Source of the DNA: Octopus bimaculoides
Lineage: Eukaryota
DNA: 64,000 nucleotides
Assembly: GCF_001194135.2 (NCBI RefSeq)
Contig: NC_068998.1
Span: 12,325,183-12,389,182, forward strand
Direction: 5' to 3'
Shown: positions 4,552-33,754 of the stretch, in pieces
How the letters are laid out: each line of letters opens with the position of its first letter
Position numbering within the stretch: the first letter of the stretch is position 1
Program-made: the position numbers and the translations under genes
The notes under the pieces: generated by a model
The model's input: only the letters and a program-made list of their open reading frames with translations
What the model was told of the DNA's origin: nothing
The model's database searches: none

Positions 4552-5061
4552 TCAGAAAGTGTTCATTTCAAGGAGATCTGATATTTTATTATTCTCATAT
4601 TGGAAAATTTTGCGCAATGAAGCCAGCAATTCATCACGAAACTGTCGACTGAAAAGACCGTAAATATACAGGTTAAGAGCAGAGCTGAGATAAAAAGAAT
4701 AGGTTAATAATTTGTAAATCATTTGTTCTTTATCACTTGCAGCATCTTCAAAATCTTTAACATAAAACTTCCTGAAAACTCCACTGAAGTGTGGTATATA
4801 GCTGAGAATCCAGAACAAAGAGATGATGAAGATTGAATTGGACCGAAATGGAGGCATTGATTCTTTTCTAAATTTTGCAAAATGGGTAGATCGAATGTCT
4901 GAAGAACTGCTGTTAGTATACTGCTCTTCAGGTTTGGAAATGTTATAATTCATGTAAAATTCAATAAACCGATTTGCTCTGCTTTTCTTTGCTTGGACAA
5001 GTTTCCAAATTGGCATCGCAATTAATATGTATATTATCACGAGAATTATAGACATAAAAAT
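4552..5061 (-). pseudogene. GPCR copy 1: TM5-TM7 remnant of a class A orphan GPCR
   Basis: Open 167-aa frame aligns to copies 3 and 4 (IILVIIYILI, FWILSYIPHF, YKLLTYSFYLSSALNLYIYGLFSRQFR). NPxxY has become NLYIY. No TM1-TM4 sequence is recognisable upstream. Confidence 0.8.
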
Positions 5062-5117
5062 GGACTGACCTCCTCCCCCAAAATTCGGACCTTGTGCCTA
5101 GAATAGAAAAGAATATC
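5062..5117 (+). mobile_element. 3' tail fragment of SINE family A at the truncation point of GPCR copy 1
   Basis: GGACTGACCTCCTCCCCCAAAATTCGGACCTTGTGCC resembles the tail CGACTTAACCCCTCCCCCAAAATTTGCTGGCCTTGTGCC at 12473-12510. Confidence 0.6.
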
Positions 5118-6144
5118 GTAACTACATTTGAAGTAGTACGGAGTGCGTTCTGTGTGAACATATCAATTCTGTAAAAGGTTATTCTAGATACCCTTGCCCA
5201 AATATTTATTTGAGAAATACTTTTCTTACACCTGACGTGCACAATTCACGTCATAACATTTATGTTCATGTTGGTGCATCGTATTCTGATTATTTGATCT
5301 GGTGCAGCTAGAATCAAGCCCTCTGTCATTTCCTTAGCCATTGAAATGACTTCTGATCTCGGTAACTTTCAGTACTTCCAAAAACATTGGGTAAACTTGT
5401 TGCTTTCAAATTCCGAGAACTTCACGTTTTTCTCTTCTTTCAGCCACCATATCAAGTCTTCATACAAAGTCTTTATACAAAGATCAACTCAAGCAAAAAG
5501 AAATAAGTACAGGCTTGTTTTTTTTTGCCTCTGATCACTTTTCTTTTAAACTTTGCTTTGTAATTTTTACAGGATGTATTTGATGGCATATGCAAAAATC
5601 GGGCGAAGCGATTCGCTGCATGATCTGAAGATCTGAAAAATTTCAGAAATTGTTTAAGAAATAACAATCTTTCACATCTACTTCAGTTTCAAACTCGTCT
5701 CATATTTATTTTTATTTTTGAATATAAATAATCCAGTCGCTAGTTTCTCAAAGAACACGGAGCGACCTGTTTTGGAACACCAATTTGCAAACGTTGTAGA
5801 ACAATCTAAAGTACTATAAACGTCTCAGGGATAGATAACGGGAGAAAGACTACATCAGTGCTTCCAGCCTAGGGACCCTGAGAGTTTCGCTATTTGCAAG
5901 AGTTCGGCAGCGGTTCCGCGATGATGATAATTAGCCTAATTGTATGTAAGTGCATTATCGAATCATTTTTATCGAGTCAATTCGTATTGATAAATATATA
6001 TTATACGTGCACGACATATTCTGTTAATGTGGGGAAGTACAGACAATTGTTAGATGGCAAGAAGTCCTTACAGGAAATAAAAAAAAAGAAAACAGGCACG
6101 AAGGTCAGCATGACTAAATAATCTATATAATAATCTGCTTGCTC

Positions 6145-6249
6145 GAGGCGGTGAACTGGCAGAAACTTTAGCAAGCCAGGCGAACTGCTTTAGCGATATT
6201 TCGTCTGTTTTTACCTTCTGAGTTCAAATTCCGCCGAGGTCGACTTTGC
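6145..6249 (+). mobile_element. SINE family A, 5' half
   Basis: Head GAGGCGGTGAACTGGCAGAA (A-box-like) and GAGTTCAAATTCC (B-box-like). Confidence 0.8.
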
Positions 6250-6385
6250 ATCGAGAATTTGTCCTCCAGGGCCAGACCGTTAAACAAGAGTTCTATTTCG
6301 AAGATGATAATGTTAAAGCTAAGGTAAATAAGTTATTTTTTTTTGTTAAACATAACTAGTCCGGGAACTTTCTGATACCACCTCA
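6248..6385 (+). mobile_element. Mariner remnant: short transposase piece plus right terminal inverted repeat
   Basis: Codes HREFVLQGQTVKQEFYFE (mariner EFVPxGQTVN motif); ends with GTCCGGGAACTTTCTGATACCACCTCA then TA, resembling the TIR of the element at 46182-46398. Confidence 0.6.
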
Positions 6386-6444
6386 TATACTATATATGTA
6401 TATACATGAGTATGTGTGGTGGGTATGTGTGTGTGTGGTGCGTG

Positions 6445-6665
6445 TGTTTGTGTTTTTGTCCCCGCTTCTCTGCTTGACAAACGTTGTTGGCTTGTTTTAC
6501 GAACCCGTAAATTAGCGGTTCAGCAAAAGACTGGTAAACAGATTTCAAAAATAGATAATAAATAAATAAAAGAATTATAATAATGAAAATAATAAGTACT
6601 GGGTCAATTTGTTCAGCCAAAGACGTTGCCCCAATATGGCCATATTCAAATGGTTTGAACAAAAT
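6445..6665 (+). mobile_element. SINE family B, degenerate 3' part
   Basis: TTTGTCCCC...GCTTGACAA...CCGTAAATTAGCGGTTC(A)GCAAAAGA motifs shared with the full copy at 60455-60858. Confidence 0.7.
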
Positions 6666-7129
6666 ACAAAAGCTATTCATAACACTACTAACCTTACCAA
6701 ACACCCCCTTCATACAACATACATCAGATGCAATACTTAAACACGAACGCAAAAACCCTCCTTTATCCATATAATATCCTGGTATGAAACAGGATATGAT
6801 CCAATAATATCCAGTTTAAGTCTAAGTATTAGCACTCATATGCCTTAAGTATGTTAATAACAGTATATTCATCAAAACATCATCTGCAAGTACTTACTTA
6901 CGACTGACTATTTGTGTATGTCCGGAAATGTTTATATTTACAAATACATCCTGTAAATTGAAATACGAGCTTAAATTAACACCTAAATATTCCTTGTAAA
7001 GATTACTTTTTCTAAAGGTACACTGGGATCTAATTTACTAACTCTGTCATGTTTGTCATGCTTTCTTTGTCTTTCACTGAAGGAATATTGATTTCCTCGC
7101 CTCCGTCTACGCTTGTGTTGTAGTCATCC

Positions 7130-7440
7130 CTTCTTCTTCTTCTTCTTCTTCTTCTTCTTCTTCTTCTTCTTCTTCTTTTTCTTTTTCTTTTTATTTTTCT
7201 TTTTCTTTTTCTTTTTCTTTTTCTTTTTCTTTTTCTTTTTCTTTTTCTTTTTCTTCTTCTTCTTTTTCTTTTTCTTTTTCTTTTTCTTTTTCTTTTTCTT
7301 TTTCTTTTTCTTTTTCTTCTTCTTCTTTTTCTTCTTCTTCTTCTTCTTCTTCTTCTTCTTCTTCTTCTCCTCCTCCACCTCTTTCCCCTCCTCGTCTCCC
7401 TCCTTCCCTTTCTCCTCTTCCTCCTTCTCCCCGTCCTTTC
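7130..7440. repeat. Long polypyrimidine tract of (CTT)n and (CTTTTT)n
   Basis: Seen directly; accounts for the poly-F/K/R ORFs. Confidence 0.95.
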
Positions 7441-7767
7441 CTTACTCATGTATATTTTGATAATGGTATAAAAACGTTTTTGTACATGGTTCTTACTCTG
7501 TCTGTCTGTCTGTCTGTCTGCCTCATTCTCTCTTTGTCACTCATCTCTAAAATTAACTCTCCTCTTTGCCATTAATTAATTCCGAAGTGCTAAAAATGCT
7601 ACTGAGGCATATGGATGAAGAAGGAGATCTAAATATTTCAAGTCATAATGAAATCCACCCTCAAAAACAGTATCAAAGATTTTTTTTAGATGCGACACAA
7701 GACTAAATCCTTGGGAAAAATCATGCGGCAGAAGAAAACCTAGAAATGTTTCAACTGCTAAGTGTGT

Positions 7768-8152: not shown

Positions 8153-8211
<59 letters not shown>

Positions 8212-9116: not shown

Positions 9117-10239
9117 CATGAAATAAAATCCTTTAGTTCCGTTAGTTCAATGAAAGATTGTCAACCAAAAGGTCCCTAGATATATGGATTAACAGCTCAC
9201 TTGAGATAAAATAATTCATCGACAACTTGTATATTGCAAGTTCGGTATGACTTAAGAGTGTCATTAAAATTTTTAACTGACATCCTCCAAAATATTGCAA
9301 CGAAATGTAAAAGAAAAAGGAAAAAAAATCTTATAGTCCAGATCAAAGTGATAGTGAACAGAATTAAATTAGTCCTATATGGTTGCATTGTGTGCACTCT
9401 GTAAATATTAGTAGAGAGCACTCGTTTCTTTGAAGAACTACCATCACTATTCTCCTCATCAGATAGTGTAATTTTTTGGAGTTGAAAAATCCAGAACTAT
9501 GTCTTCTTACTTTTGCTCTGTAAATGTGCAAAACACGTTTCCCAATTGATGAGTATATTATTATGAGAACAAAATACATAAAACAGCTACCGACGAGCAA
9601 TGTAGTATAATAGATTAAAGGATAGACTGTATCATTTAAACTATCAGAAGATGAACACACTTCTCCAATATGTCTACTTTGTCCGACTATCCTGTGTTGT
9701 TTGCTGTATACAAAAGTTGATGGTATACTAAAAATAAGAGTCGAGGATACCATTGATGCTTGAATTATATTCCCAATCTTAACAGAGAATTGTTGCTGAA
9801 GGGGTCGACCCTACAAGTATGTATCTATCGACTGTTATAAGGTATACAATAATGGCTGAAGTGAAAACTGCTGTAGAAACGGTAAAACGCATCAAGCAGC
9901 ATGCAGCATCACAGTGGAACGTGCAAGGAAAATGAAAAATTACTACATACTGAACAAGTTAGAAAATTACACATTGACAGTGCTACAATGGAAATCTGTG
10001 ACCGTAATTTCAAATTTGAAATGGATAAAAGTGACAATACTATTTCCGGTTACTCCAAGTCTCATATAAATTCCGAGATATTCTATTATAGGAAAATAAT
10101 CATCTGTCATTTCAGCATTCAGTTCTAAAATACCACCATAACCGTTGACAATTTTGTTTATGCCCTTCTTTTCTTCTTCTCTACCCCATGGAAAACTTCG
10201 TAGACAGATTTTGTTTGGCATAAATGACACTTGTATTTT
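9117..10239 (-). pseudogene. GPCR copy 2: frameshifted near-full-length class A GPCR pseudogene
   Basis: Pieces across frames: ELNAEMTDDYFPIIEYLG...GVTGNS (TM1), IVALSMCNFLTC (TM2), DAAC...ITVDRY (DRY at 9821-9829), IFSIPSTFVYSKQ...CS...VYPLIYY, RTNLILFTITLIW, AVNPYI*. Several frameshifts and stops; no ATG at the paralogous start position. Confidence 0.9.
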
Positions 10240-11193: not shown

Positions 11194-11194
<1 letters not shown>

Positions 11195-13504: not shown

Positions 13505-14180
13505 TCAGTATGAGAAAGGTGACGTTTTCAAACTTCTGTAGAATAAGCATGTGGCATTGGTTTGCGCCACCTGCACATGTTTTGGTGAGGAACCATTGTT
13601 GCTGACCTTTCTCTGTCTTTTCTTGGAGGCAACCTTCTCCATGACTTCCACCGTCTCACCCTCCAATGGGGGGGGGGGGAGCNNNNNNNNNNTCACCCTC
13701 CAATGGGGGGGGGGGGGAGCTTTTCTTTTTCCTGCTCCACGGCCCTAGGGGCAGTTCTTCCTGATATGGCCAGGCTCCAGGTACAGGTGACACTTGGGGT
13801 GGCGTCCTTTGAGTATTACCGGGTACCTGCACCCGACCATCTTAAAAAAATCAGGAAAAACAAGGTCTTTAGTGGATTGGGTCCAAAGGGTCAAAACAAC
13901 TTTTGCCCCGACCCAATCAGCTACAGGCTTCATAGTGACACTCAAGAGCCTGGAATTTCTGCCACCCAGACCCCTGCGAACAGTATCTTCTATCCACTGG
14001 GGATTTATCCCGGGAGACAGCCCACACACCCAGGCTCTTATGAGTTTCCTCCCACAATATGTGGGGAGGAAAAAATGTCCTGGCCCTCTAAGAGCTTGCT
14101 TGCAAATTTGCAAGCTTTCTCGGGGTGCCAAACAGCAACCACACCGTTGCATATTTGGCCCTCCGAGATATATGTTTGAT
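13505..14180 (-). mobile_element. Gag-like ORF1 fragment of a non-LTR element (L1/Tx1-type) with a zinc knuckle
   Basis: GRHPKCHLYLEPGHIRKNCP is a CX2CX4HX4C knuckle with one C to Y change; a premature TAG is followed by a proline-rich/basic tail. Clade assignment is inferred. Confidence 0.6.
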
Positions 14181-18530: not shown

Positions 18531-18781
18531 TAAAAACTAGAATATATACATGTACTTAAACGCACGCCTATAAACCAATAAATGGTTTACAATTATCTTT
18601 TCATGCATTAATTATTGTTAAACACTTAAAAAAATCCAAATTTGTAGTTGATTGTTGGTTGTTATCCATGATTGAATCGATCCACTTTGTCAATATTCAT
18701 CTGTAGGCATTTTAATAACCCTTGTTAATTATTGATTGATGTCTTGCTCTTAATACAGTACTTCTACACACCAATAGCAAT

Positions 18782-19258: not shown

Positions 19259-20320
19259 ATGGAAAAAAACAATAACGTCAACAATTGTACTAATATTATG
19301 GAAGAACTAAACGCTAAAATGGTGAACGTTTATTTACCTGTATTATTATATCTCGGAACGGTTATGACTTTGGGAGTAATTGAAAATTTCATTGTAATAT
19401 ATGTATACTACTATAAGTTTGATGAATCAGCCACTCAGGTGTTTATTGTAACGCTCTCTGCGTGCGATTTTCTGACGTGCATAATATGTATACCTATGGA
19501 AATTGTGATTCTACATTTTTCATTCACTTTTCACAGCGATATTGCATGCCGTGTGGTACATTTTACGACAGCTGTAGCAGTAACCAATTCAGCTATGATT
19601 ATATTCCTTATATCAGTCGATAGATTCAGACTTGTATGTCAACCTTTTAATCAACAAATTTCCCCTCAAAATGCAAAGAAAATTCTAGGATTTTCAGCAA
19701 TCTGCTCTTTAATTCTTTGTACACCATCATTATTTGTGTACAGTAAACAAAATAGAATGGTGAAACAATGTGGAAATATCGGAGAAGAGTGTTCACTTGG
19801 TCCCTATTTAAATTCCGCAGTATATCCCTTTGCGTATTATATTTTAATAGTCACTGTTTTCTCTTTGGTCTTTATTTTACTCGTACTCATATACATAAAA
19901 ATTGGAAGAAAGATCTTCCAAATTTACAAAGCAAAGAAAAATAATAGAGCCAATACATTTCTTGTATTTACTATGCTCCAAAGCATGCTATCAGATAATG
20001 ATTGGGTAGAGGATAAAGAACCCGCTACGAAGCAGAGAAGACATTCAATGCATCCAAATCGGACTAATTTAATTTTGTTCATCATCACTTTGGTCTGGTG
20101 TATATGCTTTTTCCCATATTTCACGGCAGTGTTCTGGCGATTGTTAACTAAACGTTTTAGTGAAACTACAAGTGATAAAGAAAAAATTCTTTATAAATTG
20201 TTAATGTGTTCTTATTACCTCAACGGGACTCTTAACCCATTAGTTTACGGACTTTTCGGTCGGCAGTTTCGTATTGAATTAATAAGTTTATTTCATGAAA
20301 CTTCCCACTTCTTTAAATAA
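19259..20320 (+). CDS. GPCR copy 3: intact class A orphan GPCR, 353 aa, single coding exon
   Basis: Seven hydrophobic segments, LSACD (TM2), C3.25, DRF, ECL2 Cys, CFFPY (TM6), NPLVY then helix 8 FGRQFR, N-terminal sequon NCT. The ORF track starts at an upstream TTG; the first in-frame ATG is 19259 and aligns with the copy 4 start. Confidence 0.93.
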   Translation: MEKNNNVNNCTNIMEELNAKMVNVYLPVLLYLGTVMTLGVIENFIVIYVYYYKFDESATQVFIVTLSACDFLTCIICIPMEIVILHFSFTFHSDIACRVVHFTTAVAVTNSAMIIFLISVDRFRLVCQPFNQQISPQNAKKILGFSAICSLILCTPSLFVYSKQNRMVKQCGNIGEECSLGPYLNSAVYPFAYYILIVTVFSLVFILLVLIYIKIGRKIFQIYKAKKNNRANTFLVFTMLQSMLSDNDWVEDKEPATKQRRHSMHPNRTNLILFIITLVWCICFFPYFTAVFWRLLTKRFSETTSDKEKILYKLLMCSYYLNGTLNPLVYGLFGRQFRIELISLFHETSHFFK

Positions 20321-21600: not shown

Positions 21601-21926
21601 CTTTTACTCTGTTTCAGTCATTTGACTGTGGCCATGCTGGAGCACCGCCTTTAGTCGAGCAAATCGACCCCAGGACTTATTCTTCGTAAAAGTAGCCTGT
21701 GGTATATATATATGTATGTGTGTGTATATGTTTGTGTGTTTGTCCCCCCCCAACTTCGCTTGACAACCGATGCTGGTGTGTTTACGTCCCCGTAACTTAG
21801 CCGTTCGGCAAAAGAGACCAATAGAATAAGTACTAGGCTTACAAAGAATAAGTCCTGGGGTGGATTTGTTCGACTAAAGGCGGTGCTCCAGCATGGCCAC
21901 AGTCAAATGACTGAAACAAGTAAAAG
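21601..21926. mobile_element. Inverted pair of SINE family B 3' ends
   Basis: 21601-21689 is the reverse complement of 21839-21926 with 3 substitutions and 1 indel. Confidence 0.9.
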
Positions 21927-22535
21927 AATAAAAGACAATATACTGCAACTTCTAGTTAGGTTTACTATAGAGGTTACGTTAGGCATATTAATTCCAATTA
22001 AAACACGCGGATTTTGCTTAGCAGTAAAAGTAGTATACTTTGCAACATATGGACCGGATCTCCCACCATCTCATAGAACTTGAAATTAATCAAACAATCA
22101 TCAACTCTATTCCTCACACTAGCGTCAGTATGGCCAAAAACATGTATAGATGATAGGCTTAACATGTTTCAACATATCAAAATTGAATATTGTTTTAATT
22201 ATCTCACTGGATGTTATCAGTTGTAAACACAATGATATAAAAACATAGACAAGTTCGTTAATTGCTTATGGAACAAATGTTCATTAAGATCACATATCTG
22301 TCTGATGTGTGAAATCATAGAGGAAAGCTAGGTAAGTTATTCTATTATCGCATTCTGCGAAAATAATGGCAGTAAAAAATCATGGTAGAACAAAAAAAGA
22401 ATAATAAAAATAAAAAAATAAACGAAATTCTTAGGAAACTTAAGTTGTAGTGAAGTCTCAGACAGCCATAAGTACTTTTGGAGTGTTACTTATAAGAACT
22501 GTATTATGACATTACAATGATTTCAATACCCTGCT

Positions 22536-22866
22536 GTTTGATTTCAGTCTCACTGCGTGGCACCTTCGGCGTGTGTTGGCTTGAAGCTATAGTTCTACTA
22601 TAGCTTCAGGCCAACCAAAGCCTCCTGAGTGGATTTGGTAGGTAGAAACTGAAAAAAGCCCGTCTTATATATATGTGTGTAACTTTGTGTCTGTGTTTGT
22701 CCCTCCACCACCGCTTGACAACTGGTATTAGTGTATATACGCTCTCCGTAACTTAGTGGTTCGATAAAAGAAACCGATAGAATAAGTACTGGGGCCGATT
22801 CGTTCGACTAAAATTCTTCAAGACGGTGCCCCGACATGACCGCAGGCTAATGGCTGAAACAAAAGA
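22536..22866 (+). mobile_element. SINE family B copy with an internal palindrome
   Basis: Aligns to 60455-60858 except for an inverted duplication at 22575-22615. Confidence 0.85.
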
Positions 22867-24126
22867 GAAAAATGTTTTTCCAATAACTCAGTTGAGGTAA
22901 AAAAATAATTTGAATGTTTTTCTCAAGTTTATTGACAATTCAAAAACCCCTGCCAAAAGTGATTACAAACTTCTTACTCAAGATATCTCATAAAGAGGCC
23001 TTTTTTATTCGCACACCTTCCCCCCCCCCCCCACAGTACTATAGAGCAGTGTAACGAACTGTAGCTTTATAATATTAGTGAATCATCGCCTATAGGAACG
23101 ATACTATAACAGACAGGAGTCACAGCACAAATGTTCTTACAGCGACTCCTAGCAGAAATTTTCTACGAATTTTGCTATCATTATTTTCCCTTTTTCAGAA
23201 TTGTTTCTAGTCTGATTAAAAAAAAAACAGTCCCAGATTCTCAAGTATCTTGCTGTATTGATTATTTGGGGATGTAATTAAAGATTTGGTATAGATATAA
23301 TAAAAAATTATGACATCAGAATGATTACACTACGTCATGATTCAAACCTCATTTTCAACTTGAAAACATTTCCATCTGGCAGAACTTACCAGGAAATCGA
23401 AGGTTTTTTTGTTCACAAAAATAGAAATTCGAACTTCTTTAGCACTGTAGCTAAAATCTTATGGGATCTATCACTCACTTATCCAAAAGATGTTACTCTC
23501 CTGAATGTTGGTATCTTTTTCTTCTATTTTAATATATAATCCTTTTCTTTTTTTTTCAGATTTCTGTTAAGATAAATCTGTCCTGATGTCATGAGATTTC
23601 AGTAATATAATTATATTCTGTATTTTTTGGGAACAGTTTACTTTCTATTCCTATAACGGTGTTGTTTATATATTACTACACATAGAGAGAGGAGTCGATT
23701 TTAACACAATCGGTAAACTTTATACAAATGTTTAAACTATTTGTAGATGCGAGAAAGTTTTCAACCACAATGCGTTCTGATTAATAAACTGAAAAATCTT
23801 TTATGTACTGAGAAACAACTATATCATAAATCAGTAGAAATGCCACAATCACTCACTAATCCAGAAGATGTTACTATCTTCGATGCTGGTATCTTTTTCC
23901 GCTAGGAGTCGCGACATGAACATTTATGGTACCTTATCTTTTGCTTTTGCTATTGAAGTGATTCCTCCCGAGATGTCTCAGAGTGCATGTACTACTTGAT
24001 GCGTAGAAAAACTTAATTCGTTTCCGTCTTTGTTGGATTAGCTCGTATGACAAAGAATTGCCATCCAATTTTACAAAATTCTCACATCTAGATTTTTTCC
24101 TTGTAAAAGTACTTCTTTCTACTAAA

Positions 24127-24293
24127 GGTGCAAAGCCTGGAACTGGGGGAAAGTCGATCACATCAACTCCAGTACATAATTTATCGACCTCGAAAGTATG
24201 AAAGGCAAAGTCGACCTCAGGACATAAAGACGGATGAAATACCGCTAAGCATTTTGCCCGGCGTGCTAACCATTCTGTCAGCTCATTACCTTT
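24127..24293 (-). mobile_element. SINE family A with internal deletion
   Basis: Reverse complement of the family A head and middle. Confidence 0.8.
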
Positions 24294-24816
24294 TTTTCTT
24301 GTAACAATAATAGTTCTAAAAATTCCATATGTTCATTTCCCACGGAAGGAAGGTTTGTTTTAAAACAGTAGCTATATGAGAAGACTATAGTTGTTGCAAT
24401 CGTATACGAGTCACTCCGGCTATTGTTGTTGTTATTACTGTCACCAAATTCCAAATTACATATTTAAGTATCTGGGATATTTTCATCTATTAAATGCTCA
24501 CTTTACCGTTATTTTTCTACTCCTTATTATACATATGGGTGTGTTGTTTCTTTGACACAGTATTGTTCTTTCGTGTAGTATCCATTTTGATTGTGAAAGT
24601 GTAACGTGTAAATTAAATTTAAAAGTGTATGAAGCAGACGGTCTTTCTTGTCTACTACGGGGAACGAAAACTGCTCTTTTCTAACGAAGTTTAGTAGAGT
24701 CCTTGATTTTTTTCTTATACTTTTACAAGAACTCCAAATAAGATTTCATTTGGTAATGATTGAATAAAACGTGTTTGGAAGACAGAAGCAAAAACGACAT
24801 CAACACAAGTGTCAAA

Positions 24817-24886
24817 TAGCAGCAGCAGCAGCAGTAGCATCATCATCATCATCATCAGCAGTAGTAGTAGTAGTAGTAGTAGTAGC
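24817..24886. repeat. Compound (AGC)n(ATC)n(AGT)n trinucleotide repeat
   Basis: Seen directly. Confidence 0.95.
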
Positions 24887-24904
24887 AGAATGGTGGAGTC
24901 GGAG

Positions 24905-25227
24905 ACTAGCAAAATCCTCTGGAATTTTCCAATCCAAACAAATCAGGCATCTCGTGGTGGTGGACAAAATGTACCACATATGCTAAATAGTTGATGTTGT
25001 ATGCCCCTTTGACCCACGAAAAGTCAAGAAGGTAGGTGAAAAGATAGATAAATACAACCCTCTTAAATACGAAATAACCCGGCTGTGGAAAATGAAGAAG
25101 GGAACAGTATCAGAAGGCATCAAGGGGAGTGTAAAGGAAATTGGAATAGAGTGCCCAGTAGAACTGTTACAAAAGGCTTGCCACCTTGGCACGGCCAGAA
25201 TAACGAGGAAAGTATTAGATAAGTGAA
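24905..25227 (+). mobile_element. RLE LINE 3' fragment
   Basis: HLVVVDKMYHIC...DVVCPFD...KIDKYNPLKYEITRLWKM...ELLQKACHLGTARITRKVLDK*. Confidence 0.8.
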
Positions 25228-25259
25228 AAGAATGGATAGCATGGTACCGTAGAAGACAA

Positions 25260-28200
25260 TAAAACTAAAATAAGACAATAAAAGTAATGGCAGCATGACA
25301 GATGAACAAAAGGCAATCTACGACAGAATAGAGGCAAGACTACAGGAGAACGATAACGACATTATTTGCAACCTTAAAAAGGTTGATCGATGGAAATTGA
25401 ACCAAGAAACGAAAAATGCCAATGAAATTCTGAAATACATCAGAACAAACAACATCACAGAAACAAATAATTTGATCAAGGCAGTAAGTATTCGTACTCT
25501 ATATTAGATAATATAGAGCAGTAAGTATTGCTGTAACAGAAAACGTGGGTGTTGATGTCAAGAAAAAGAAACATAATAGGATGCTCTCGAAGGAAATCTG
25601 TGTTAGACCGAAAAGAGAAAGGGGAGCTTAAAAGCGAACAAAAATACAGGGCGCTGAAAAGGAAGTATAATATTGAAAGAAAGGGCCTGAAAGTAGTAAT
25701 GGAGGAACTGAAGCAGTGCCTTGTTGCAAAGAAAGTAAAGATGGTAAGATACGACCAAAGAATGAAGGGACACCACCAGAATAGGTTATTCAGAGAGGAT
25801 CAGAAGAGATTCTATAAAGAAATAAATGGAGGGTGTACAGATGAAAAGTTGATACCAGATAACAATGAAAGTTAAATGTTTTGGAGTGACATCTGGAGCA
25901 AAGACAAGGAGCACAAATAGAATGCTGAATGACTGCAAGAACTGAAACAAACAGTAGTCTGTCCAAAACAGGCAGAACTAGTCATTTCAGTTAGGGAAGT
26001 GAAGGAAATCAGCAAAAAAAAAAAAAAAAAAAAATGAGCAACTGCAAGGCCCCGGGACCAGATAGAGTTCAAGGCCACTGGATCAAAAGATTTGGTGAAT
26101 GTCATGCACGAATAGCTGCACAACTCAACACCTTTTTAAATGCCGACCAAGTAACACCAGAGTGGTTGACAATGGGTAGGACAGTGCTGAGGTCGATATC
26201 CTGTTTACAACTTATGTGGAAGTTATTGACTGGAATACTCACAGAGTCATTGTACGAACATCTGGAAAAAAATGGAGTCCTGCCACATGAGCAGAAGGGT
26301 TGCAAGCGTAAATGCAAAGGTACCAAGGATCAGTTCCTGATAGACAAAACTGCAAGATAGACAAGACTGCAAGAGGAGGAAAAGTAACTTAGCCATGTCA
26401 TGGATCGACTATCGTAAGGAGTACGATATGATTCCACATTCTTGGATTATGGAATGTATGAACCTATTTGGTATTGCATCGAATGTTAAGTGATTGCTTG
26501 GAAAAAGTATGACGAGTTGGAGGACAGACCTGAGAGTATACGGAAGCAGTTTAGGGACAGTAGAAATTAGGAGGGGCATCTTCCAAGGGGACTGCCTGTC
26601 CCCACTGATCTTTGTACTGAGCTTGATACCACTAACACTGATTCTGAGGAAAGCAAAAGCTGGGTATTTGTTCAAAAGCCTCTAACAAAATGTCAACCAC
26701 TTATTCTTCATGGATAACCTCAAACTTTATGGTAAAGGTGAAGCCCAAGTCAGTTCCCTTGCTGATACGGTGTATAACTTCAGTGCTGATATCAGAATGG
26801 TGTTGGGACTGAGAAAGTGTGATGTGTTAGTAATGAAGAGAAGCAAAATCAAATGTATGGACGGGCTAACGATACGGGGAGGTTATGTATGGACGGGTTA
26901 ACGGTCGGGGGGTGGGGTTATGAAGCAGATAGAAGAGACGGGCTATAAGTACTTGGGAATTTTGGAAATGGATAAATTGATGGAGGAAGAAATGACAGAA
27001 AAATTTAAGGTAGAGTACATGCGCAGACTGAGACTGATCCTTCAGTCAAAATTAAACGGACGGAATAAGATTTAAGCTATCAACACCTTAGATATGGAGC
27101 AAGGGTAATCGCATGGACATTAGACGAACTAAACAGCTTGGACAGAAAGAGAAGGAAGTTGCTAACTAGATATGGGACACTACACCCCAAAAGTGACGCA
27201 GAGACTGTATGTACCAAGAAAAAGAGGGGGAGAGGACTTATTGTATGCAAACACAGTATTAGAACAGAAAAAAAAACAACATAGCATGGTATGTAAAAAA
27301 TGCTACAGAACGGCTATTATTAGAAGCAAGAGAGTCAGGCTTGTGTAGGATGAAAGATTGTTAAGGTAAAGCACTGTACAAGAAATTGAAAACGAATGAA
27401 ACTGAAAATAAAAGGGTAAAGAAAAGAATGCATGGTCAATCTCATAGGGTTGTTAAAGATAAGACAGACAGAGAAAAAGATGGCTGTGGCTGACTAAAAG
27501 TGATTTAAAACCGGAAATGGAGGCTCTAATCTGTGCTGTCCAAGAGCAAGCACTTAGAACAAACTACATAAAAAATAAACTAGACAACACACCAGAAAGT
27601 GATAAGTGCAGACTTTGTGGACAAAATGGTGAAACCGTATGGCATACTACCAGCCAATGTACGCCACTAGCCCAGAAGGAATATAAGAGATGCTACGACA
27701 ATATAGCAAGGCTTATCTATTGGACACTTTGCAACAAGTATGAACTTGACAGAGCAAAAAATTGGTACGACCACAAACCCGAAGGCACCGTCGAAAATAA
27801 AAATGCAAAAATCCTATAGGATTTTATGATTCAGTGCGACCATAAGATAGAGAATAGGAAGCCAGACATAATCTTAATTGAAAAAGAAAACAAACGATGC
27901 TGGATCATAGATATAGCATGCCCAGCTGACTACAAGGTATGCGATAAGGAAGAAAGAAATGTTGAGAGATATGACAGGTTAACTTGGGAAGTTAAGCAGT
28001 TGTAGTCGATGAAAAAGGTAGCAGTAGTACCAATAATAGTTGGAAGCCTGGGAACTGTGAGTAAAAATCTCGAGAAGTACATGGAACAAATCGGGGCTGC
28101 AATAAGGGTGGAGCACTTGCAGAAAACAGTACTGCTTGGAACCGCCCGAATACTCCGGAAAGTGCTCGAAATATAAGAGGTGTTACCTTAGTTCACTGGT

Positions 28201-28290
28201 AGTGAACAGAAGACACCGCAGTACATCTCCAGCGTTAGAAGCTGTGCAAAGGCAATAATAATAATAATAATGATGATGATAATAATAACA
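25260..28290 (+). mobile_element. R4/Dong-like LINE, ~3 kb, dead (RT, CCHC, RLE, TAA tail)
   Basis: [41 protein letters not shown], catalytic YMDD changed to FMDN, CRLCGQNGETVWHTTSQC knuckle, KPDIILIEKENKRCWIIDIACP endonuclease, (AAT)n tail at ~28254-28288; many stops and frameshifts. Confidence 0.95.
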
Positions 28291-29089
28291 GCTTACTTTT
28301 TTTTACCGCAAGGGGTCGAAGGATACCATGTGGTTTATATACTATATTTTGTCAATTGTCAATTTCTGTTCAACATTTACTAAGATCACAGCGTACGTAG
28401 TCATGCATATGACTTGCCTACTCTCTCATCTTAACCGTTCATATATATATATATATATAATACAAAGAACATATATATACATGTATACACAGAGAGGATG
28501 GTGGAGGGAGGAAGTGGAACAAGGAGGAAGGGACAGAAGGGTATAGCAGTGAAGTAGAGGCCAGGACAACAGAAGGGAGCAGAGCGAGAGGGGGAGATGG
28601 GTAAGAAGAAAGATAGATAGGTAGGTAAATAGAGGATAGGTAGAAAGATAGAGAAAGAGAGAGGATGGTAGGGAGGGGAAGTGGAACAAGGNNNNNNNNN
28701 NNNNNNNNNNNNNNNNNNNNNNNNNNNNNNNNNNNNNNNNNNNNNNNNNNNNNNNNNNNNNNNNNNNNNNNNNNNNNNNNNNNNNNNNNNNNNNNNNNNN
28801 NNNNNNNNNNNNNNNNNNNNNNNNNNNNNNNNNNNNNNNNNNNNNNNNNNNNNNNNNNNNNNNNNNNNNNNNNNNNNNNNNNNNNNNNNNNNNNNNNNNN
28901 NNNNNNNNNNNNNNNNNNNNNNNNNNNNNNNNNNNNNNNNNNNNNNNNNNNNNNNNNNNNNNNNNNNNNNNNNNNNNNNNNNNNNNNNNNNNNNNNNNNN
29001 NNNNNNNNNNNNNNNNNNNNNNNNNNNNNNNNNNNNNNNNNNNNNNNNNNNNNNNNNNNNNNNNNNNNNNNNNNNNNNNNNNNACAATG

Positions 29090-29420
29090 AACTACAGACA
29101 ACGGAACGAACACATAGGAAAACAGAAAGCCACTTGGAATATTCCTTCATCAGCTGCCTCTATTCTAACCTGACGTTTCGAAGATAAGACAGAACGTACT
29201 CTAGAATAGTCTCTTCCTGAGTAGTGGATCAACCCACTACACAGAGGATTCCAAGGTGGCAAACACAAACCAAGACAGGAAAAATTGGACAGTGAAAACA
29301 ACATTCAAAAGCCGTACGGCCAAACGCGAATCTGAGGTAGAACGCTAGTAGTCCGTCTTGCCTTCACAGCGGCTGGAGTGAAAAGAAAGCTGACCACAGG
29401 TCACACGAGAGCAGAGAGGA
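29090..29420 (-). mobile_element. Possible Penelope-like terminal-repeat remnant
   Basis: Minus strand carries GAAACGTC and CTGATGA motifs typical of Penelope pLTR hammerheads; no protein motif was recognised. Confidence 0.3.
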
Positions 29421-29682
29421 TGGTGGATATGTATGTATATGTATATGTATTTGCTAAGAGCAAATACACTGCAGTTGCCATAGAGAAAAAAATTCTCTTA
29501 AGGTAAAAAGGTGTGAGAACATCCAGTTTGTTGAGTGTCGCTATCTCTCGAGAATCTCAGACATCGATGCCTTTAGCAGTTGAAATATGTGACAAACATA
29601 TTTCAACTAACCTAAATTCTGCTCATACTTAACACTGCTTTGCGTCTATGTTCCGTTTATATGTATATATTTTTTATTTTTT

Positions 29683-29948
29683 ATGCGCCCTTTAAAAGCC
29701 AAGCCAGGCTCATGGGCCCGATTTTCCGGGTTCTATGGCGTATGTGTTCCCCCCAGCTGGACGGGACGCCAGTCCATCGCAGCGTTACTCAAGAAACAGG
29801 AAGAAAGAGTGAGAGAAAGTTGGAGCGAAAGAGTACAACAGGGGTCACCACCACCCCCTGCCGGAGCCTCGTGGAGCTTTTAGATGTTTTCGCTCAATAA
29901 ACACACACAACGCCCGGTCTGGGAATCGAAACCGCGATCCTCCGACCG
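29683..29948 (-). mobile_element. SINE family C, head truncated
   Basis: Highly similar to 20890-21150. Confidence 0.9.
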
Positions 29949-30294
29949 AGGATAAAATAGTATCGGTGGTTATAATGGCGACAGGAGCGGTATGATGTGT
30001 GATGCTGAGGTGATGGTGGTAATAGTGTTAGTTGTGTGGTGGTAGTAATGTAGTGGTTATACTGGTTGTGGTGGTGAAAGTGACTGTCAAAGTAACCGTC
30101 ATGATAACGTTGATGGCGGTGTATGTGGTTGAAGTAGAAGCAATGACAATGCTGCTGATGATGTTGGTGGTTGTGGTGGTGGTGATTGTGATATGGTGGT
30201 AGTAGTGGTGGTAGTGGTAGTCATCGTCGTCGTCGTAGTGCTGCTCCTTCTGGTTTGGTGGAGGTCTGCGCTCTCCGAGTGCTTTTCGAGTTTT

Positions 30295-31003
30295 TAACAA
30301 AACTTAAGGGTTGATGGAAGACTGAACAGTGTAGGCTATCTGCAATATTTAAATAATCAGACACCACCGGGATCTATTTTCCAGTAGGACAATTGCCCCG
30401 TTCAAAAGACTGGGAGAGTTCTGCAACATTTTGAGCGCAATAGTATGGTGGTTATTGAGTGGCTTCCGCAGTGCCCGGATTTGAATCCGATAGAAAATTT
30501 ATGGAATTATGTTTCTAAAAGAGTTCATGCTAAAAAAAAACAAAAAAAAAAACACACACAAACAAAAAAACAACAACAAATTTGTCCCAATTGAATAATT
30601 TTATTGAAGAAGTATGGCAGAACATTCCAAGTGATTTTTGTGCTCATTTGTCGAACTCCATGTCTCTCCGTTGAAAGGCTGTAATTGAAATTAATGACTA
30701 TGGAACAAGTTATAAATAATAAATTTTTGTTCGTTGATCATTTGAGCCGTAGATTTTCAATTTAAACAAAATAATGTTGGTACAGTCTTAAACTTATTTT
30801 GCCGACAATTTCTAATCATTTGGATTAATTGCGCATTAAAATTATTTGAAAGGTAGAAAGATATATAACGTCTATATCATTTGAAAGAGATAAAATTCTA
30901 CATACACAGTAAAAAGTAAAATAGTTTTATACAGTTTTGTTAAAAATATATTAACGAAGGAATAGAACTGTCATCATCGGTCTTAAACTTATTTTGGCAA
31001 GTG
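30295..31003 (+). mobile_element. Tc1-family transposon, 3' half with IR/DR-type right end
   Basis: VDGRLNSVGY...IFQ*DNCP...WLPQCPDLNPIENLW; direct repeat GTCTTAAACTTATTTTG at 30785-30801 and 30980-30996; ends GTG followed by TA. Confidence 0.85.
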
Positions 31004-31009
31004 TATGTG

Positions 31010-31051
<42 letters not shown>

Positions 31052-32585
31052 NNNNNNNNNNNNNNNNNNNNNNNNNNNNNNNNNNNNNNNNNNNNNNNNN
31101 NNNNNNNNNNNNNNNNNNNNNNNNNNNNNNNNNNNNNNNNNNNNNNNNNNNNNNNNNNNNNNNNNNNNNNNNNNNNNNNNNNNNNNNNNNNNNNNNNNNN
31201 NNNNNNNNNNNNNNNNNNNNNNNNNNNNNNNNNNNNNNNNNNNNNNNNNNNNNNNNNNNNNNNNNNNNNNNNNNNNNNNNNNNNNNNNNNNNNNNNNNNN
31301 NNNNNNNNNNNNNNNNNNNNNNNNNNNNNNNNNNNNNNNNNNNNNNNNNNNNNNNNNNNNNNNNNNNNNNNNNNNNNNNNNNNNNNNNNNNNNNNNNNNN
31401 NNNNNNNNNNNNNNNNNNNNNNNNNNNNNNNNNNNNNNNNNNNNNNNNNNNNNNNNNNNNNNNNNNNNNNNNNNNNNNNNNNNNNNNNNNNNNNNNNNNN
31501 NNNNNNNNNNNNNNNNNNNNNNNNNNNNNNNNNNNNNNNNNNNNNNNNNNNNNNNNNNNNNNNNNNNNNNNNNNNNNNNNNNNNNNNNNNNNNNNNNNNN
31601 NNNNNNNNNNNNNNNNNNNNNNNNNNNNNNNNNNNNNNNNNNNNNNNNNNNNNNNNNNNNNNNNNNNNNNNNNNNNNNNNNNNNNNNNNNNNNNNNNNNN
31701 NNNNNNNNNNNNNNNNNNNNNNNNNNNNNNNNNNNNNNNNNNNNNNNNNNNNNNNNNNNNNNNNNNNNNNNNNNNNNNNNNNNNNNNNNNNNNNNNNNNN
31801 NNNNNNNNNNNNNNNNNNNNNNNNNNNNNNNNNNNNNNNNNNNNNNNNNNNNNNNNNNNNNNNNNNNNNNNNNNNNNNNNNNNNNNNNNNNNNNNNNNNN
31901 NNNNNNNNNNNNNNNNNNNNNNNNNNNNNNNNNNNNNNNNNNNNNNNNNNNNNNNNNNNNNNNNNNNNNNNNNNNNNNNNNNNNNNNNNNNNNNNNNNNN
32001 NNNNNNNNNNNNNNNNNNNNNNNNNNNNNNNNNNNNNNNNNNNTATATATATATATATTCACAAATATAAGGTTTATATATTATCTCTTCTTAATTTTTG
32101 ATTGATGTTTGACCATTTAATATCCAAAATGTATCTACACAAATATTTATCCATAAAAAAATTATGAATTATTACTCTGCCTATTTTTTGTTATAGATAT
32201 ATTATTTGTTAGCCATTCAGAAACACACAATATCTATTAACTTCACTTAAAAACATTTGTTATTTGTAATATAGTGATATTGTGTAATATTGTCAGTGAT
32301 CAGGTTGCAGTTCATGCAACGAAAATTTTGACAGCATGTAACAAATAATAAATGCTTAAGGGAAACAAACGCTCTCTGTGTGTTTTGAATGGATAATATT
32401 TGTCTTGCAAACTGAAACTGTTTTAGTCTCAACACACGATGTCAGATGAAATTACTTGCCCGGCAAGGACATCTCCGAAATAGTTTTTTCTTATATAAAT
32501 CTTAGTAGACTTAATATTTCAGGGTAACATTTAACATTTCATTTCAAACAACATTTTGAACTAAAATATCTAAAATATTTATGCA

Positions 32586-32607
32586 TCACCGATTTCTATC
32601 TTTCCAG
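32586..32607 (+). promoter_or_regulatory. 3' splice acceptor upstream of GPCR copy 4
   Basis: CACCGATTTCTATCTTTCCAG, 64 nt before the ATG; nearly identical to CACCGTTTCCTATCTTTGTAG in front of copy 2. Confidence 0.65.
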
Positions 32608-32671
32608 GAAATAAACCAAAAAGCTGTCTTTAAACTTTGAAGCGACATTCCCAAGAAGGTGGAAAAAAAAA

Positions 32672-33754
32672 ATGGAACAAAATAAAAGCATCAACGAATG
32701 TGTTATTAGTGTAGAAAAATTGAATGCTGATATTGTGAATGCTTATCTTCCTATAATAATGTTTCTAACAATTTCTATGATAATTGGAGGAACTGGAAAT
32801 TTCTTTGTAACCTATATATACTATCATAAATTTTATCCAAACGCTACAAAATTATTTATTGTAACACTTTCAATATGCGATTTTCTAATTTGCATAGTAT
32901 GTATACCTATGGAACTTATCGTTCTATATTATTCTTACATTTTTGAGAGTGATGTTGCATGTCGTGCGATACGCTTTTGTGTTTGTCTAGCCATAATCAC
33001 TTCAGCTCTGATTGTATTTAGTATAGCAATCGATAGATACTTGCTTATATGTAAGCCTCTTAAAAAAAAAATTAGCATTCGCAAAGCAAAGAAAATTCTG
33101 ACAGTTTTAATCACCATTTCCTTTATTTTGAGTATACCAACACTTTTTTTGTACGGCCAACAGATCAGAATGATCAGACAATGTGGAAATATAGCAAAAG
33201 ATTGTTCTATTTCTTCAAATGTAATTGACACAGTCTATCCTGTAATCTATCATATTATTCTGGCAACCGCTTGTTATTCGTTATTTATTTTTATCTTAGT
33301 AGTATACATACTGATTGGAAAGAGTATTTGGAACACTTACACAGCCAAGAATTTTAAAAGAAGTAGTATTTTTGACATTTCAATCACAACTGAACCCTCT
33401 ACCCAAAATGAAGGCATGTCCACTGATATATGTCCAATAAAGCGCTCGTTCTCTTTAGTGAGTGTTAAAAGAGCGTCAATGAATCCAGTTAGAACCAGTT
33501 TCATTTTGTTGACCATTACTTTGGTCTGGATGGTGACTTATTTACCACATTTCGCTGGAGCATTCTTGAAGGTGTCTACTAAAAATTTTACCAATATTAC
33601 AAGTCATAAAGACCATGCCATTTACAAATCGTTACTGTATTCTTTTTATCTCAGCTCTGCTATTAACCCACTTCTTTATGGACTTTTTTCTAAAAGGTTT
33701 CGAAAAGAAATGCGCTTGCTATTTAAGACACTTTTCTCACGAGGTACGCAATAA
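32672..33754 (+). CDS. GPCR copy 4: intact class A orphan GPCR, 360 aa, single coding exon
   Basis: GN (TM1), LSICD (TM2), C3.25, DRY at 33032-33040, ECL2 Cys, YLPHF (TM6), NPLLY then FSKRFR; sequons NKS, NFT, NIT; colinear with copy 3. Confidence 0.95.
   Translation: MEQNKSINECVISVEKLNADIVNAYLPIIMFLTISMIIGGTGNFFVTYIYYHKFYPNATKLFIVTLSICDFLICIVCIPMELIVLYYSYIFESDVACRAIRFCVCLAIITSALIVFSIAIDRYLLICKPLKKKISIRKAKKILTVLITISFILSIPTLFLYGQQIRMIRQCGNIAKDCSISSNVIDTVYPVIYHIILATACYSLFIFILVVYILIGKSIWNTYTAKNFKRSSIFDISITTEPSTQNEGMSTDICPIKRSFSLVSVKRASMNPVRTSFILLTITLVWMVTYLPHFAGAFLKVSTKNFTNITSHKDHAIYKSLLYSFYLSSAINPLLYGLFSKRFRKEMRLLFKTLFSRGTQ

What the first reader, a model, noticed from the sequence alone, without database searches (positions are those of the whole stretch)
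4552..33754. Birth-and-death cluster of four orphan class A GPCR paralogs
Seen: two intact receptors, one frameshifted pseudogene and one TM5-7 remnant within 30 kb, all from one subfamily. The coding region is uninterrupted, the TM4 Trp and TM5 Pro are absent, and TM6 CWxP is replaced by CFFP/TYLP/SYIP. Established: clustered single-coding-exon GPCRs with frequent pseudogenes are the pattern of fast-evolving chemosensory-type families. Inference: this may be a lineage-specific, uncharacterised receptor family; ligand and tissue cannot be read from sequence.
Basis: partly seen in the sequence, partly recalled or inferred. Interest (0 to 1): 0.75.

Follow-up and report, generated by a model that had tools for sequence, protein, structure and literature searches.

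The report
Testis-specific octopus GPCR gene array
The four receptor-like sequences are real, but they are one end of an already published tandem array of octopus orphan class A GPCR genes that are expressed almost only in testis and evolve unusually fast, so they look like male reproductive receptors, not smell or taste receptors.

Summary
The window (Octopus bimaculoides chr 18) carries two intact single-ORF class A GPCR genes (19259-20320, 32672-33754), one heavily decayed pseudogene (9134-10176) and one 5'-truncated TM5-7 remnant (4552-5055). No assembly gap touches any copy.

They are the distal part of a ~71-kb array with four more intact copies just upstream of the window. The family is already described: it is 'group 2', a cephalopod-specific class A expansion in Ritschard et al. 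2019. Their table lists both intact genes (Ocbimv22013759m and Ocbimv22013760m) as 96.4% and 99.7% testis-expressed, with none of either gene's expression in sucker or skin.

The missing TM4 Trp and TM5 Pro, and S-Y/F-x-P in place of CWxP, are confirmed. They are shared by a mollusc-wide orphan clade and are not special to this cluster.

New here: each paralog lineage has its own ortholog in other Octopus species. Those orthologs diverge at or above the neutral rate while staying open. Gene B has omega 1.87 (p=0.004), and its nonsynonymous divergence of 19% compares with 8% in syntenic flanks.

Best reading: male reproductive receptors under positive selection. Ligand and cell type are unknown.

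The parts
4552..5055 (-). 5'-truncated remnant (TM5 to helix 8) of an L002-like paralog. Open 167-aa ORF, NPxxY degraded to NLYIY, one codon lost in TM6.
   Evidence: tblastn gives 62-65% aa identity to L002/L007 residues 216-356. DNA homology to L002 covers only 4540-5059, at 78% over 524 bp. It sits inside the L002 lineage in the tree (98/80 support). pN/pS against L002 is 0.74-0.97, roughly neutral. No TM1-4 sequence is found anywhere upstream.
5064..5264 (.). Dispersed SINE-like repeat (~150 bp) lying against the remnant's truncation point
   Evidence: An own-genome DNA search with 5056-5900 gave 1649 first-look candidates. All 39 scored non-self hits fall within query positions 9-212, most of them on 57-209, at 78-87% identity on many chromosomes. 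The edge of the repeat is only approximately placed.
9134..10176 (-). Old, heavily decayed full-length pseudogene of the same family
   Evidence: The two main HSPs lie in different frames (10158-9487 and 9496-9134), with further frame changes at 9812-9989. There are at least 8 in-frame stops, including two around the NPxxY region. Terminal branch length is 1.29. It falls in the core clade (100/100) and is weakly sister to the L006 lineage (90/91).
19259..20320 (+). Intact gene A (353 aa), identified as Ocbimv22013759m / A0A0L8HIJ1. Class A GPCR with DRF, CFFP and NPLVY motifs.
   Evidence: Pfam 7tm_1 E=6e-33 over residues 43-330. The published InterPro row for A0A0L8HIJ1 gives PF00001 at 42-330, and its Scaffold21063 position 18670-19834 has the same spacing to B as in the window. 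Expression is 96.4% testes and 3.5% retina. The ID assignment rests on position and domain coordinates, not on a sequence match.
32672..33754 (+). Intact gene B (360 aa), Ocbimv22013760m / A0A0L8HIH6. Class A GPCR with DRY, TYLP and NPLLY motifs; under positive selection.
   Evidence: Pfam 7tm_1 E=1.5e-28. It is in the same 90% cluster as UniRef A0A0L8HIH6. Expression is 99.67% testes. Against the syntenic O. sinensis ortholog, omega is 1.64-1.95 by counting methods and 1.87 by ML, with LRT p=0.004 against omega=1.
32044..32671 (+). Upstream 628 bp of gene B, more conserved than the surrounding intergenic DNA; a candidate promoter or 5'UTR
   Evidence: 5.8% mismatches against O. sinensis, compared with 8.2% in 4470 bp of syntenic flanks. 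A function is inferred only.
13683..13692 (.). Assembly gap (10 N) between the pseudogene and gene A; intergenic
   Evidence: No cross-species check was available for this gap.
28692..29083 (.). Assembly gap between A and B; intergenic
   Evidence: Flanks are colinear with O. sinensis locus L036.
31052..32043 (.). Assembly gap 629 bp upstream of B; intergenic. Its true length is probably near zero.
   Evidence: Window 31034 aligns to L036 position 9170 and window 32044 to L036 position 9156, so the two sides abut in O. sinensis.

Best explanation
The finding is the distal half of a ~71-kb tandem array on Octopus bimaculoides chromosome 18. The array holds six intact genes, one decayed pseudogene, one truncated remnant and one stray 5' fragment.

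The genes are orphan class A (rhodopsin-like) GPCRs with a single coding exon. They belong to the published 'group 2' cephalopod-specific expansion.

Shown:
- The two intact window genes keep the residues needed for a signalling-competent receptor: N1.50, D2.50, the TM3 Cys, D-R-Y/F, Y5.58, P6.50, NPxxY and helix 8.
- They are transcribed almost exclusively in testis.
- Their lineages are older than the split between Octopus species.
- Orthologs change at or above the neutral rate while staying open. Gene B is significantly above it.

Inferred:
- The copies arose by unequal crossing-over within the array.
- They act in male germ cells or sperm as receptors for a fast-changing, probably peptide, ligand of reproductive origin.
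- Sexual selection or sperm-female co-evolution drives their amino-acid turnover, while surplus copies are lost by truncation or decay.

I put about 0.95 on the identity of the genes and about 0.5 on the reproductive-receptor mechanism.
For: Identity:
- The window is chr18:12325183-12389182 of a 2.34-Gb genome, and hits are named O. bimaculoides.
- B shares a 90% cluster with A0A0L8HIH6. Table S2 of PMC6408891 lists it, and the gene 13.5 kb upstream of it, as class A group 2 with 99.7% and 96.4% testis expression.
- Four more intact copies lie at window -37685 to -6139. Three of them are 94-99.7% testis-expressed in the same table. Two are matched to their gene IDs by exact sequence; the third is matched by position only.

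Family placement:
- The 22-sequence core clade has 100/100 support. It holds only Octopus sequences plus Logan sequences of unknown species.
- Argonauta, cuttlefish-related (Sepia-like) and other mollusc sequences fall outside it.

Receptor competence: the motif table and family alignment. A low-confidence model still shows seven helices, an ECL2 hairpin and helix 8.

Selection:
- ML omega against the O. sinensis orthologs is 1.87 for B (p=0.004), 1.58 for L003, 1.61 for L006 and 1.00 for L014. Pooled, it is 1.50 (p=0.002) (counting methods).
- For B, pN is 0.190 against 0.082 in the flanks (Fisher p=4e-19). Omega is 2.7 in the ICL2-TM5 block and 0.88 in the N-terminus to TM3.
- Under neutral substitution, the chance that an ORF of this length stays free of stops is 0.2-5% per gene pair.

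The source paper reports positive selection on group 2 branches and testis expression in a second octopus, C. minor.
Against: - Expression comes from a single published bulk RNA-seq table. I could not check reads, cell type or protein.
- For A, L014 and, individually, L003 and L006, omega is not significantly different from 1. That is also what relaxed constraint would give.
- The A ortholog in one Logan sample carries a stop inside NPxxY. The O. sinensis ortholog of L006 has ERY changed to EQY, and both members of that pair lack P6.50. Some lineages are therefore losing function.
- Blastn flank alignments favour the better-conserved intergenic stretches, which may understate the neutral rate. 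However, pS inside the genes (0.08-0.12) agrees with the flank figure.
- No ligand, G-protein partner or sperm localisation is known.
Confidence: 0.6

Rival explanations
1. Chemosensory receptors: a fast-evolving, clustered, intronless GPCR family used in suckers, olfactory organ or skin to detect external chemicals.
For: The gene architecture fits: intronless coding regions, a tandem array and pseudogenes. One array member outside the window, L002 (Ocbimv22006267m), the parent lineage of the remnant, is expressed 65% in retina, 18% in sucker and 16% in skin, with none in testis. Lineage-specific class A expansions in other Lophotrochozoa are proposed chemoreceptors (PMC11886862).
Against: Both intact window genes have none of their expression in sucker or skin and 96-99.7% in testes. 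So do most other core-clade members. The family is small, about 10 close copies genome-wide, and has one-to-one orthologs between Octopus species. PMC11886862 reports reduced class A lineage-specific sets in cephalopods and points to ionotropic chemotactile receptors instead. The olfactory organ was not sampled in the published data.
Confidence: 0.07
2. Functionless or dying genes: relaxed constraint after duplication combined with promiscuous testis transcription. On this view the array is drifting toward pseudogenes and the receptors do nothing important.
For: Omega is about 1 for A, L014 and, within error, L003 and L006. Dead copies are common: the window pseudogene and remnant, L022 with 3 stops in the 35-Mb cluster, and the A ortholog with a stop in a Logan sample. 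Key motifs are lost in the L006 lineage. From general knowledge, testis is permissive for transcription of young or decaying genes.
Against: Intact ORFs are retained in both species for four ortholog pairs. The probability of staying free of stops under neutrality is 0.002-0.05 each, before counting indels, which are frequent in the flanks. Only in-frame indels are seen in B. Rates are uneven: TM2, TM3, TM7 and the core motifs are conserved, while TM4-6, ECL2-3 and ICL3 are fast. B's pN is 2.3 times the flank divergence, and its omega is significantly above 1, which drift cannot produce. The paralogs are old, at 42% identity, yet still open.
Confidence: 0.2
3. Ordinary neuropeptide receptors, as the NCBI names suggest (orexin/allatotropin, CCK, vasotocin, NMU, RYamide). 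On this view they are duplicated copies used for endocrine control of spermatogenesis by a conserved peptide.
For: The nearest solved structures are peptide receptors: CCK1R, NTSR1, OX1R/OX2R, NPY and NMU receptors. Ritschard et al. place group 2 inside a molluscan clade annotated as neuropeptide receptors. The model predicts an ECL2 hairpin, but with low confidence.
Against: The names contradict one another across close paralogs and orthologs. PDB matches are weak (E about 1e-14) and near-tied across several families. No one-to-one ortholog outside octopods appears in the tree or in the exhaustive profile search, where scores fall from about 500 to 389 (Argonauta) and then 295. A conserved ligand would not explain omega at or above 1.
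Confidence: 0.1

Closest known systems
'Group 2' cephalopod-specific class A GPCR expansion (Ritschard, Fitak, Simakov & Johnsen 2019, Proc R Soc B; PMC6408891)
   Same: These are the same genes. Ocbimv22013759m and Ocbimv22013760m on old Scaffold21063 are window copies A and B. The upstream copies are the Scaffold14030 genes and the 35-Mb cluster is Scaffold11985. Tandem clustering, testis-dominated expression and positive selection on some branches are all reported there.
   Different: The paper worked on the fragmented 2015 assembly, so it did not show that Scaffold14030 and Scaffold21063 form one array. I found no mention of the pseudogene or the truncated remnant in the parts of the paper and tables I read. 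It used C. minor and E. scolopes rather than O. sinensis. The flank-calibrated omega for gene B is new here.
Mollusc-wide orphan class A clade, labelled 'orexin receptor type 2-like', 'CCK receptor type A-like' or 'NMU receptor 2-like' in oyster, abalone, limpet, chiton, mussel and cuttlefish
   Same: The same motif pattern: no W4.50, no P5.50, and S-Y/F-x-P in TM6, with DRY and NPxxY kept. These are the best non-octopod profile hits.
   Different: Only 26-35% identical. They fall outside the 100/100 core clade. I did not examine their expression or evolutionary rate.
Vertebrate peptide receptors with solved structures (CCK1R, NTSR1, OX1R/OX2R, NPY1R/NPY2R, NMUR2)
   Same: The class A fold and the general peptide-receptor branch. 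These are the best PDB sequence matches.
   Different: Matches are weak (E about 1e-14, roughly a quarter of residues identical) with no preferred partner. W4.50, P5.50 and W6.48 are present in those receptors and absent here.
Rapidly evolving male reproductive and gamete-recognition proteins, and testis-expressed chemoreceptor-type GPCRs in other animals (general knowledge; not tested here)
   Same: Testis-restricted expression, whole-gene omega at or above 1, tandem duplication and frequent gene loss.
   Different: This is an analogy only. No sperm localisation, ligand or fertility role is known for the octopus genes.

Membership tests
Class A (rhodopsin-like) GPCR, Pfam PF00001 7tm_1 | Profile match above the curated gathering score | tested here: met
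   A scores 114.8 bits and B 100.5 bits against a cut-off of 30.5. The remnant and the pseudogene ORF fragment alone give no Pfam hit, but they match family members by tblastn.
Class A (rhodopsin-like) GPCR | Core micro-switch residues: N1.50, D2.50, C3.25, D/E-R-Y, Y5.58, P6.50, NPxxY | tested here: met
   All are present in A (DRF variant) and B. The remnant has NLxxY. The pseudogene has DTY, L at 6.50 and a stop in the NPxxY region.
Class A (rhodopsin-like) GPCR | Common but non-essential consensus residues: W4.50, P5.50 and the CWxP toggle Trp W6.48 | tested here: not met
   4.50 is A in copy A and I in B. 5.50 is V and L. 6.48 is F and Y. The same holds for all 44 relatives tabulated, including oyster, abalone, limpet and chiton, so this is an old clade trait.
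Ritschard et al. 2019 'group 2' cephalopod-specific expansion | Being one of the listed genes | tested here: met
   B clusters at 90% identity or more with A0A0L8HIH6. A matches A0A0L8HIJ1 by scaffold position, by spacing to B and by Pfam coordinates 42-330. L002, L003, L004, L006 and L018 match listed UniProt entries by sequence: four are identical and L004 is contained in the longer listed entry.
Ritschard et al. 2019 'group 2' cephalopod-specific expansion | Monophyly with the other group 2 genes to the exclusion of non-cephalopod sequences | tested here: met
   The core clade has 100/100 support. A wider 33-row clade (100/99) contains only cephalopod sequences plus Logan sequences of unknown species. 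Outgroup sampling was limited to the top profile hits.
Chemosensory GPCR family (functional class) | Expression in chemosensory tissue | tested here: not met
   In the published bulk RNA-seq, A and B have a sucker and skin proportion of 0 and testes 0.964 and 0.997. This comes from the literature, not from reads. The olfactory organ was not sampled.
Chemosensory GPCR family (functional class) | Species-specific repertoires with few one-to-one orthologs between close species | tested here: not met
   B, L002, L003, L006 and L014 each pair with an O. sinensis sequence, and L004 pairs with an O. vulgaris sequence. Synteny is shown for B and L003.
Named neuropeptide receptor families (orexin/allatotropin, CCK/sulfakinin, vasopressin-type, NMU, RYamide) | One-to-one orthology to a deorphanised receptor | tested here: inconclusive
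   No preferred family in the PDB search, and database names are inconsistent. I did not build a tree that includes deorphanised protostome receptors.
Positively selected male reproductive genes (evolutionary class) | Whole-gene dN/dS significantly above 1 between close species, with the ORF retained | tested here: met
   For B, omega is 1.87 with LRT p=0.004, and pN is 2.3 times flank divergence. Four pairs pooled give omega 1.50, p=0.002. A, L014, L003 and L006 are not individually significant.
Positively selected male reproductive genes (evolutionary class) | Protein present and acting in sperm or the male germ line | not testable with these tools
   Only bulk testis RNA proportions are available.

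The most novel reading that the evidence does not exclude
The testis-specific core clade, including window genes A and B, encodes sperm-surface chemoreceptors. They would read species-specific peptides released by the egg or oviducal gland. An egg-derived sperm-attractant peptide is known in O. vulgaris, reported by De Lisa et al. 2013 as cited in PMC6712556. I did not read the primary paper and know of no receptor reported for it. Receptor-ligand co-evolution under sperm competition and cryptic female choice would explain omega above 1. It would make this array a GPCR-based gamete-recognition system contributing to reproductive isolation in octopuses.
Probability: 0.15. Interest if true: 0.7.

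Novelty: already known. Interest (0 to 1): 0.3.

Why it matters
Taken as found, this is a re-sighting of a published gene family, so it adds little. Three modest additions come out of the check.

1. On the chromosome-scale assembly, two old scaffolds join into one ~71-kb array that also contains dead copies.
2. Gene B changes its protein more than twice as fast as neighbouring non-coding DNA while remaining intact. That is a clean, annotation-independent signal of positive selection.
3. The unusual TM4, TM5 and TM6 motifs define a large mollusc-wide orphan receptor clade, not this cluster alone.

If the receptors prove to act on sperm, they would be a tractable entry point into post-copulatory sexual selection and species barriers in cephalopods, where female-derived sperm attractants are reported.

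Tried and rejected
- I searched for the remnant's missing TM1-4 upstream of 5059 with 14 family proteins and found nothing. The only extra piece is a 5' fragment on a ~305-bp island between N gaps just before the window. It lies on the wrong side of the remnant to be its 5' half as assembled.
- The AlphaFold2 model of A from a 15-sequence alignment was poor (mean pLDDT 54.7, pTM 0.43). I used it only for helix boundaries and ran no fold search.
- The word-indexed protein searches found almost no non-octopus relatives. The exhaustive profile search was needed, but it carries no names, so only ten top hits were identified.
- DNA for the O. sinensis ortholog of L002 (P0005) was not on record, so there is no omega for that pair.
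- No O. sinensis ortholog of A was found among annotated proteins, nor in the 10 kb upstream of the B ortholog. I cannot say whether it is lost or merely outside the fetched stretch.
- I considered gene conversion as the cause of B's high divergence and rejected it. pS stays at 0.09-0.19 in every block, far below paralog saturation.
- Other ORFs in the window (6390-6770, 13703-14179, 45872-46258, 63136-63498) have no Pfam family above cut-off. The region 34-64 kb is microsatellite- and gap-rich with no further GPCR copy.

Full report
**What is in the sequence**

The window is chr18:12325183-12389182 of a 2.34-Gb genome. Protein hits identify it as Octopus bimaculoides. It is 36% G+C and contains 13 runs of N.

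tblastn with the two long ORFs, and then with 14 family members, finds exactly four related places:
- Copy A, 19259-20320 (+), 353 aa.
- Copy B, 32672-33754 (+), 360 aa.
- A decayed full-length copy, 9134-10176 (-).
- A partial copy, 4591-5019 (-), within an open 167-aa ORF at 4552-5055.

A and B match Pfam 7tm_1 at 114.8 and 100.5 bits against a cut-off of 30.5. They are 42% identical to each other. None of the three flagged gaps touches a copy.

The orthologous O. sinensis locus (L036) is colinear with window 21702-36097. The two sides of the 992-N gap abut there, so order and orientation around B are supported and that gap is probably much shorter than written. The 10-N gap at 13683 could not be cross-checked.

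**The two dead copies**

It has at least eight in-frame stops and at least three frame changes. Its terminal branch is 1.29 substitutions per site.

The remnant is a 5'-truncated copy of the lineage of L002, the neighbouring gene 11 kb away outside the window:
- It is 62% identical in protein to L002, and 78% in DNA over 524 bp.
- Homology ends at 5059, inside TM5.
- The break is not at an assembly gap. It lies beside a dispersed ~150-bp SINE-like repeat.
- NPxxY has become NLYIY, and pN/pS against L002 is 0.74-0.97. It is probably non-functional even though its ORF is open.

**The array is larger than the finding**

Four more intact copies lie upstream at window -37685 to -6139. That gives an array of about 71 kb (chr18:12,287,497-12,358,948).

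A 5' fragment of another L002-like copy sits on a ~305-bp island between two N gaps just before the window. The unplaced contig C68418 carries an 81%-identical L002-like gene that lacks its N-terminus. The array is therefore probably under-assembled.

A second cluster of five loci lies at 35.36-35.46 Mb on the same chromosome. O. sinensis has the same two-cluster layout on one chromosome.

**It is already described**

Ritschard et al. 2019 (PMC6408891) defined two cephalopod-specific class A expansions. Their 'group 2' has 21 genes in three species, tandem clusters, testis-dominated expression in two octopus species, and positive selection on some branches.

Gene B shares a 90% cluster with UniRef A0A0L8HIH6. 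Their Table S2 lists that entry as Ocbimv22013760m, Scaffold21063:32169-35218, group 2, Tau 0.9997, testes 0.9967. The gene 13.5 kb upstream is Ocbimv22013759m / A0A0L8HIJ1, testes 0.964 and retina 0.035. It matches A by position, spacing and Pfam coordinates.

The upstream copies L004 and L003 match 99.7% and 99.6% testis genes by sequence. L005, matched by position only, is 94.5% testis. L002 is the exception, with 65% retina, 18% sucker and 16% skin.

**Relatives and motifs**

An exhaustive profile search gives scores near 500 bits for octopus family representatives. Scores then fall to 389 for Argonauta, and from 295 bits downward there is a continuum of thousands of proteins.

Of the ten top hits I identified, the first below Argonauta are from oyster, O. 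bimaculoides itself (L018), cuttlefish-related clusters, abalone, limpet, chiton and a freshwater mussel. Their database names disagree with one another.

The maximum-likelihood tree shows the following:
- The core clade of 22 sequences has 100/100 support. It holds only Octopus sequences plus Logan sequences of unknown species.
- Inside it, A, B, L002, L003, L004 and L006 each pair with a sequence from another species, all with 100% bootstrap support. The duplications therefore predate the O. bimaculoides / O. sinensis split.

Absence of W4.50 and P5.50, and S-Y/F-x-P in place of CWxP, are confirmed for the window copies. They occur in every relative tabulated, including non-cephalopod molluscs. 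They mark an old clade, not this cluster. N1.50, D2.50, C3.25, DRY/DRF, Y5.58, P6.50 and NPxxY are retained in A and B.

**Rate of evolution**

Orthologs between O. bimaculoides and O. sinensis are only 62-83% identical. Synonymous and intergenic divergence between the two species is only about 8-12%.

| Pair | ML omega | LRT p against omega=1 |
|---|---|---|
| B | 1.87 | 0.004 |
| L003 | 1.58 | 0.13 |
| L006 | 1.61 | 0.08 |
| L014 | 1.00 | 1 |
| Four O. sinensis pairs pooled | 1.50 | 0.002 |
| L002 vs L007 (paralog pair; shows the method can return low values) | 0.49 | 0.002 |

All values are; counting methods agree.

For B, divergence rises in a clear order:
- 5.8% in the upstream 628 bp.
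- 8.2% in 4470 bp of syntenic flanks.
- 12.2% at synonymous sites.
- 19.0% at nonsynonymous sites (Fisher p=4e-19 against the flanks).

Changes are concentrated in ICL2-TM5 (omega 2.7), ICL3 and TM6-ECL3. The N-terminus to TM3 is slower, at omega 0.88.

Random substitution at the observed density leaves an ORF of this length free of stops in only 0.2-5% of trials per gene pair, before counting indels. The ORFs are therefore being kept.

For A the picture is weaker. Its only close relative is a Logan contig of unknown species, with omega 1.0 and a stop inside NPxxY.

**Interpretation**

The 'orphan, lineage-restricted, fast-evolving, with gene death' part of the interpretation also holds.

The chemosensory framing does not.

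The best-supported reading is a set of testis-expressed receptors involved in male reproduction. They are kept functional but driven to change, as many male reproductive proteins are. An egg-derived sperm-attractant peptide is reported in O. vulgaris (De Lisa et al. 2013, cited in PMC6712556). That makes a sperm chemoreceptor role a testable but unproven possibility.

The main rival is relaxed constraint combined with permissive testis transcription. It fits the genes with omega near 1 and the frequent dead copies. It does not fit gene B or the retention of open frames.

**Verdict**

The feature is real and correctly described, but it is already in the literature, so interest is low to moderate. 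The additions from this check are the joined array with its dead copies, the flank-calibrated positive-selection signal for gene B, and the finding that the odd motifs are mollusc-wide.

Noticed in passing
G000:C18:12323636-12323861 (window -1547..-1322), just before the window start: A 248-bp piece, 78% identical to the first 20 codons plus about 190 bp upstream of L002. It sits on a ~305-bp island between N gaps of 100 and 1243 bases. Unplaced contig C68418 (L007, 306 aa, 81% identical to L002, N-terminus missing) might belong there. The array is probably under-assembled.
   Followed up: partly
L037:677-1702 (Logan SRR11869391, species unknown): The closest relative of gene A (64% identity) has a premature stop inside the NPxxY motif (NPLVY becomes NEYV*), so the A lineage seems to be dying in that species.
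   Followed up: partly
L036:9764-10897 (O. sinensis CM016873.1, ~30.81 Mb): The O. sinensis ortholog of gene B has an intact 378-aa single-exon ORF with an 18-residue Ser/Arg/Gln-rich in-frame insertion in ICL3. It is annotated only as a 270-aa 'uncharacterized protein LOC115219661' with a spliced model.
   Followed up: yes
L006 (chr18:35388616-35389692) and L040:3001-4089 (O. sinensis): This testis-specific paralog (99.99% testes) has Leu at 6.50 in both species. The O. sinensis copy also has ERY changed to EQY. G-protein coupling may be altered or lost although the ORFs are open.
   Followed up: no
window 5064-5264, 6146-6249, 4056-4231, 3054-3157 and others: Short dispersed repeats (~100-150 bp, SINE-like) recur throughout the window and the upstream 50 kb. 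One has at least 1649 first-look candidates genome-wide.
   Followed up: partly
window 34000-64000: Gene-poor stretch with eight assembly gaps, most of them flanked by long TG/CA, TA/TG-type and homopolymer or trinucleotide microsatellites. No ORF has a Pfam family and there is no further GPCR copy.
   Followed up: partly
window 7030-7449 (-): An apparent 139-aa Arg/Lys-rich ORF that is simply a purine-rich microsatellite read in frame. It is not a gene.
   Followed up: no
G000:C18:35422710-35423303 (L022): Another family pseudogene (3 in-frame stops) inside the second cluster at 35.4 Mb. Gene death is not confined to the window.
   Followed up: no
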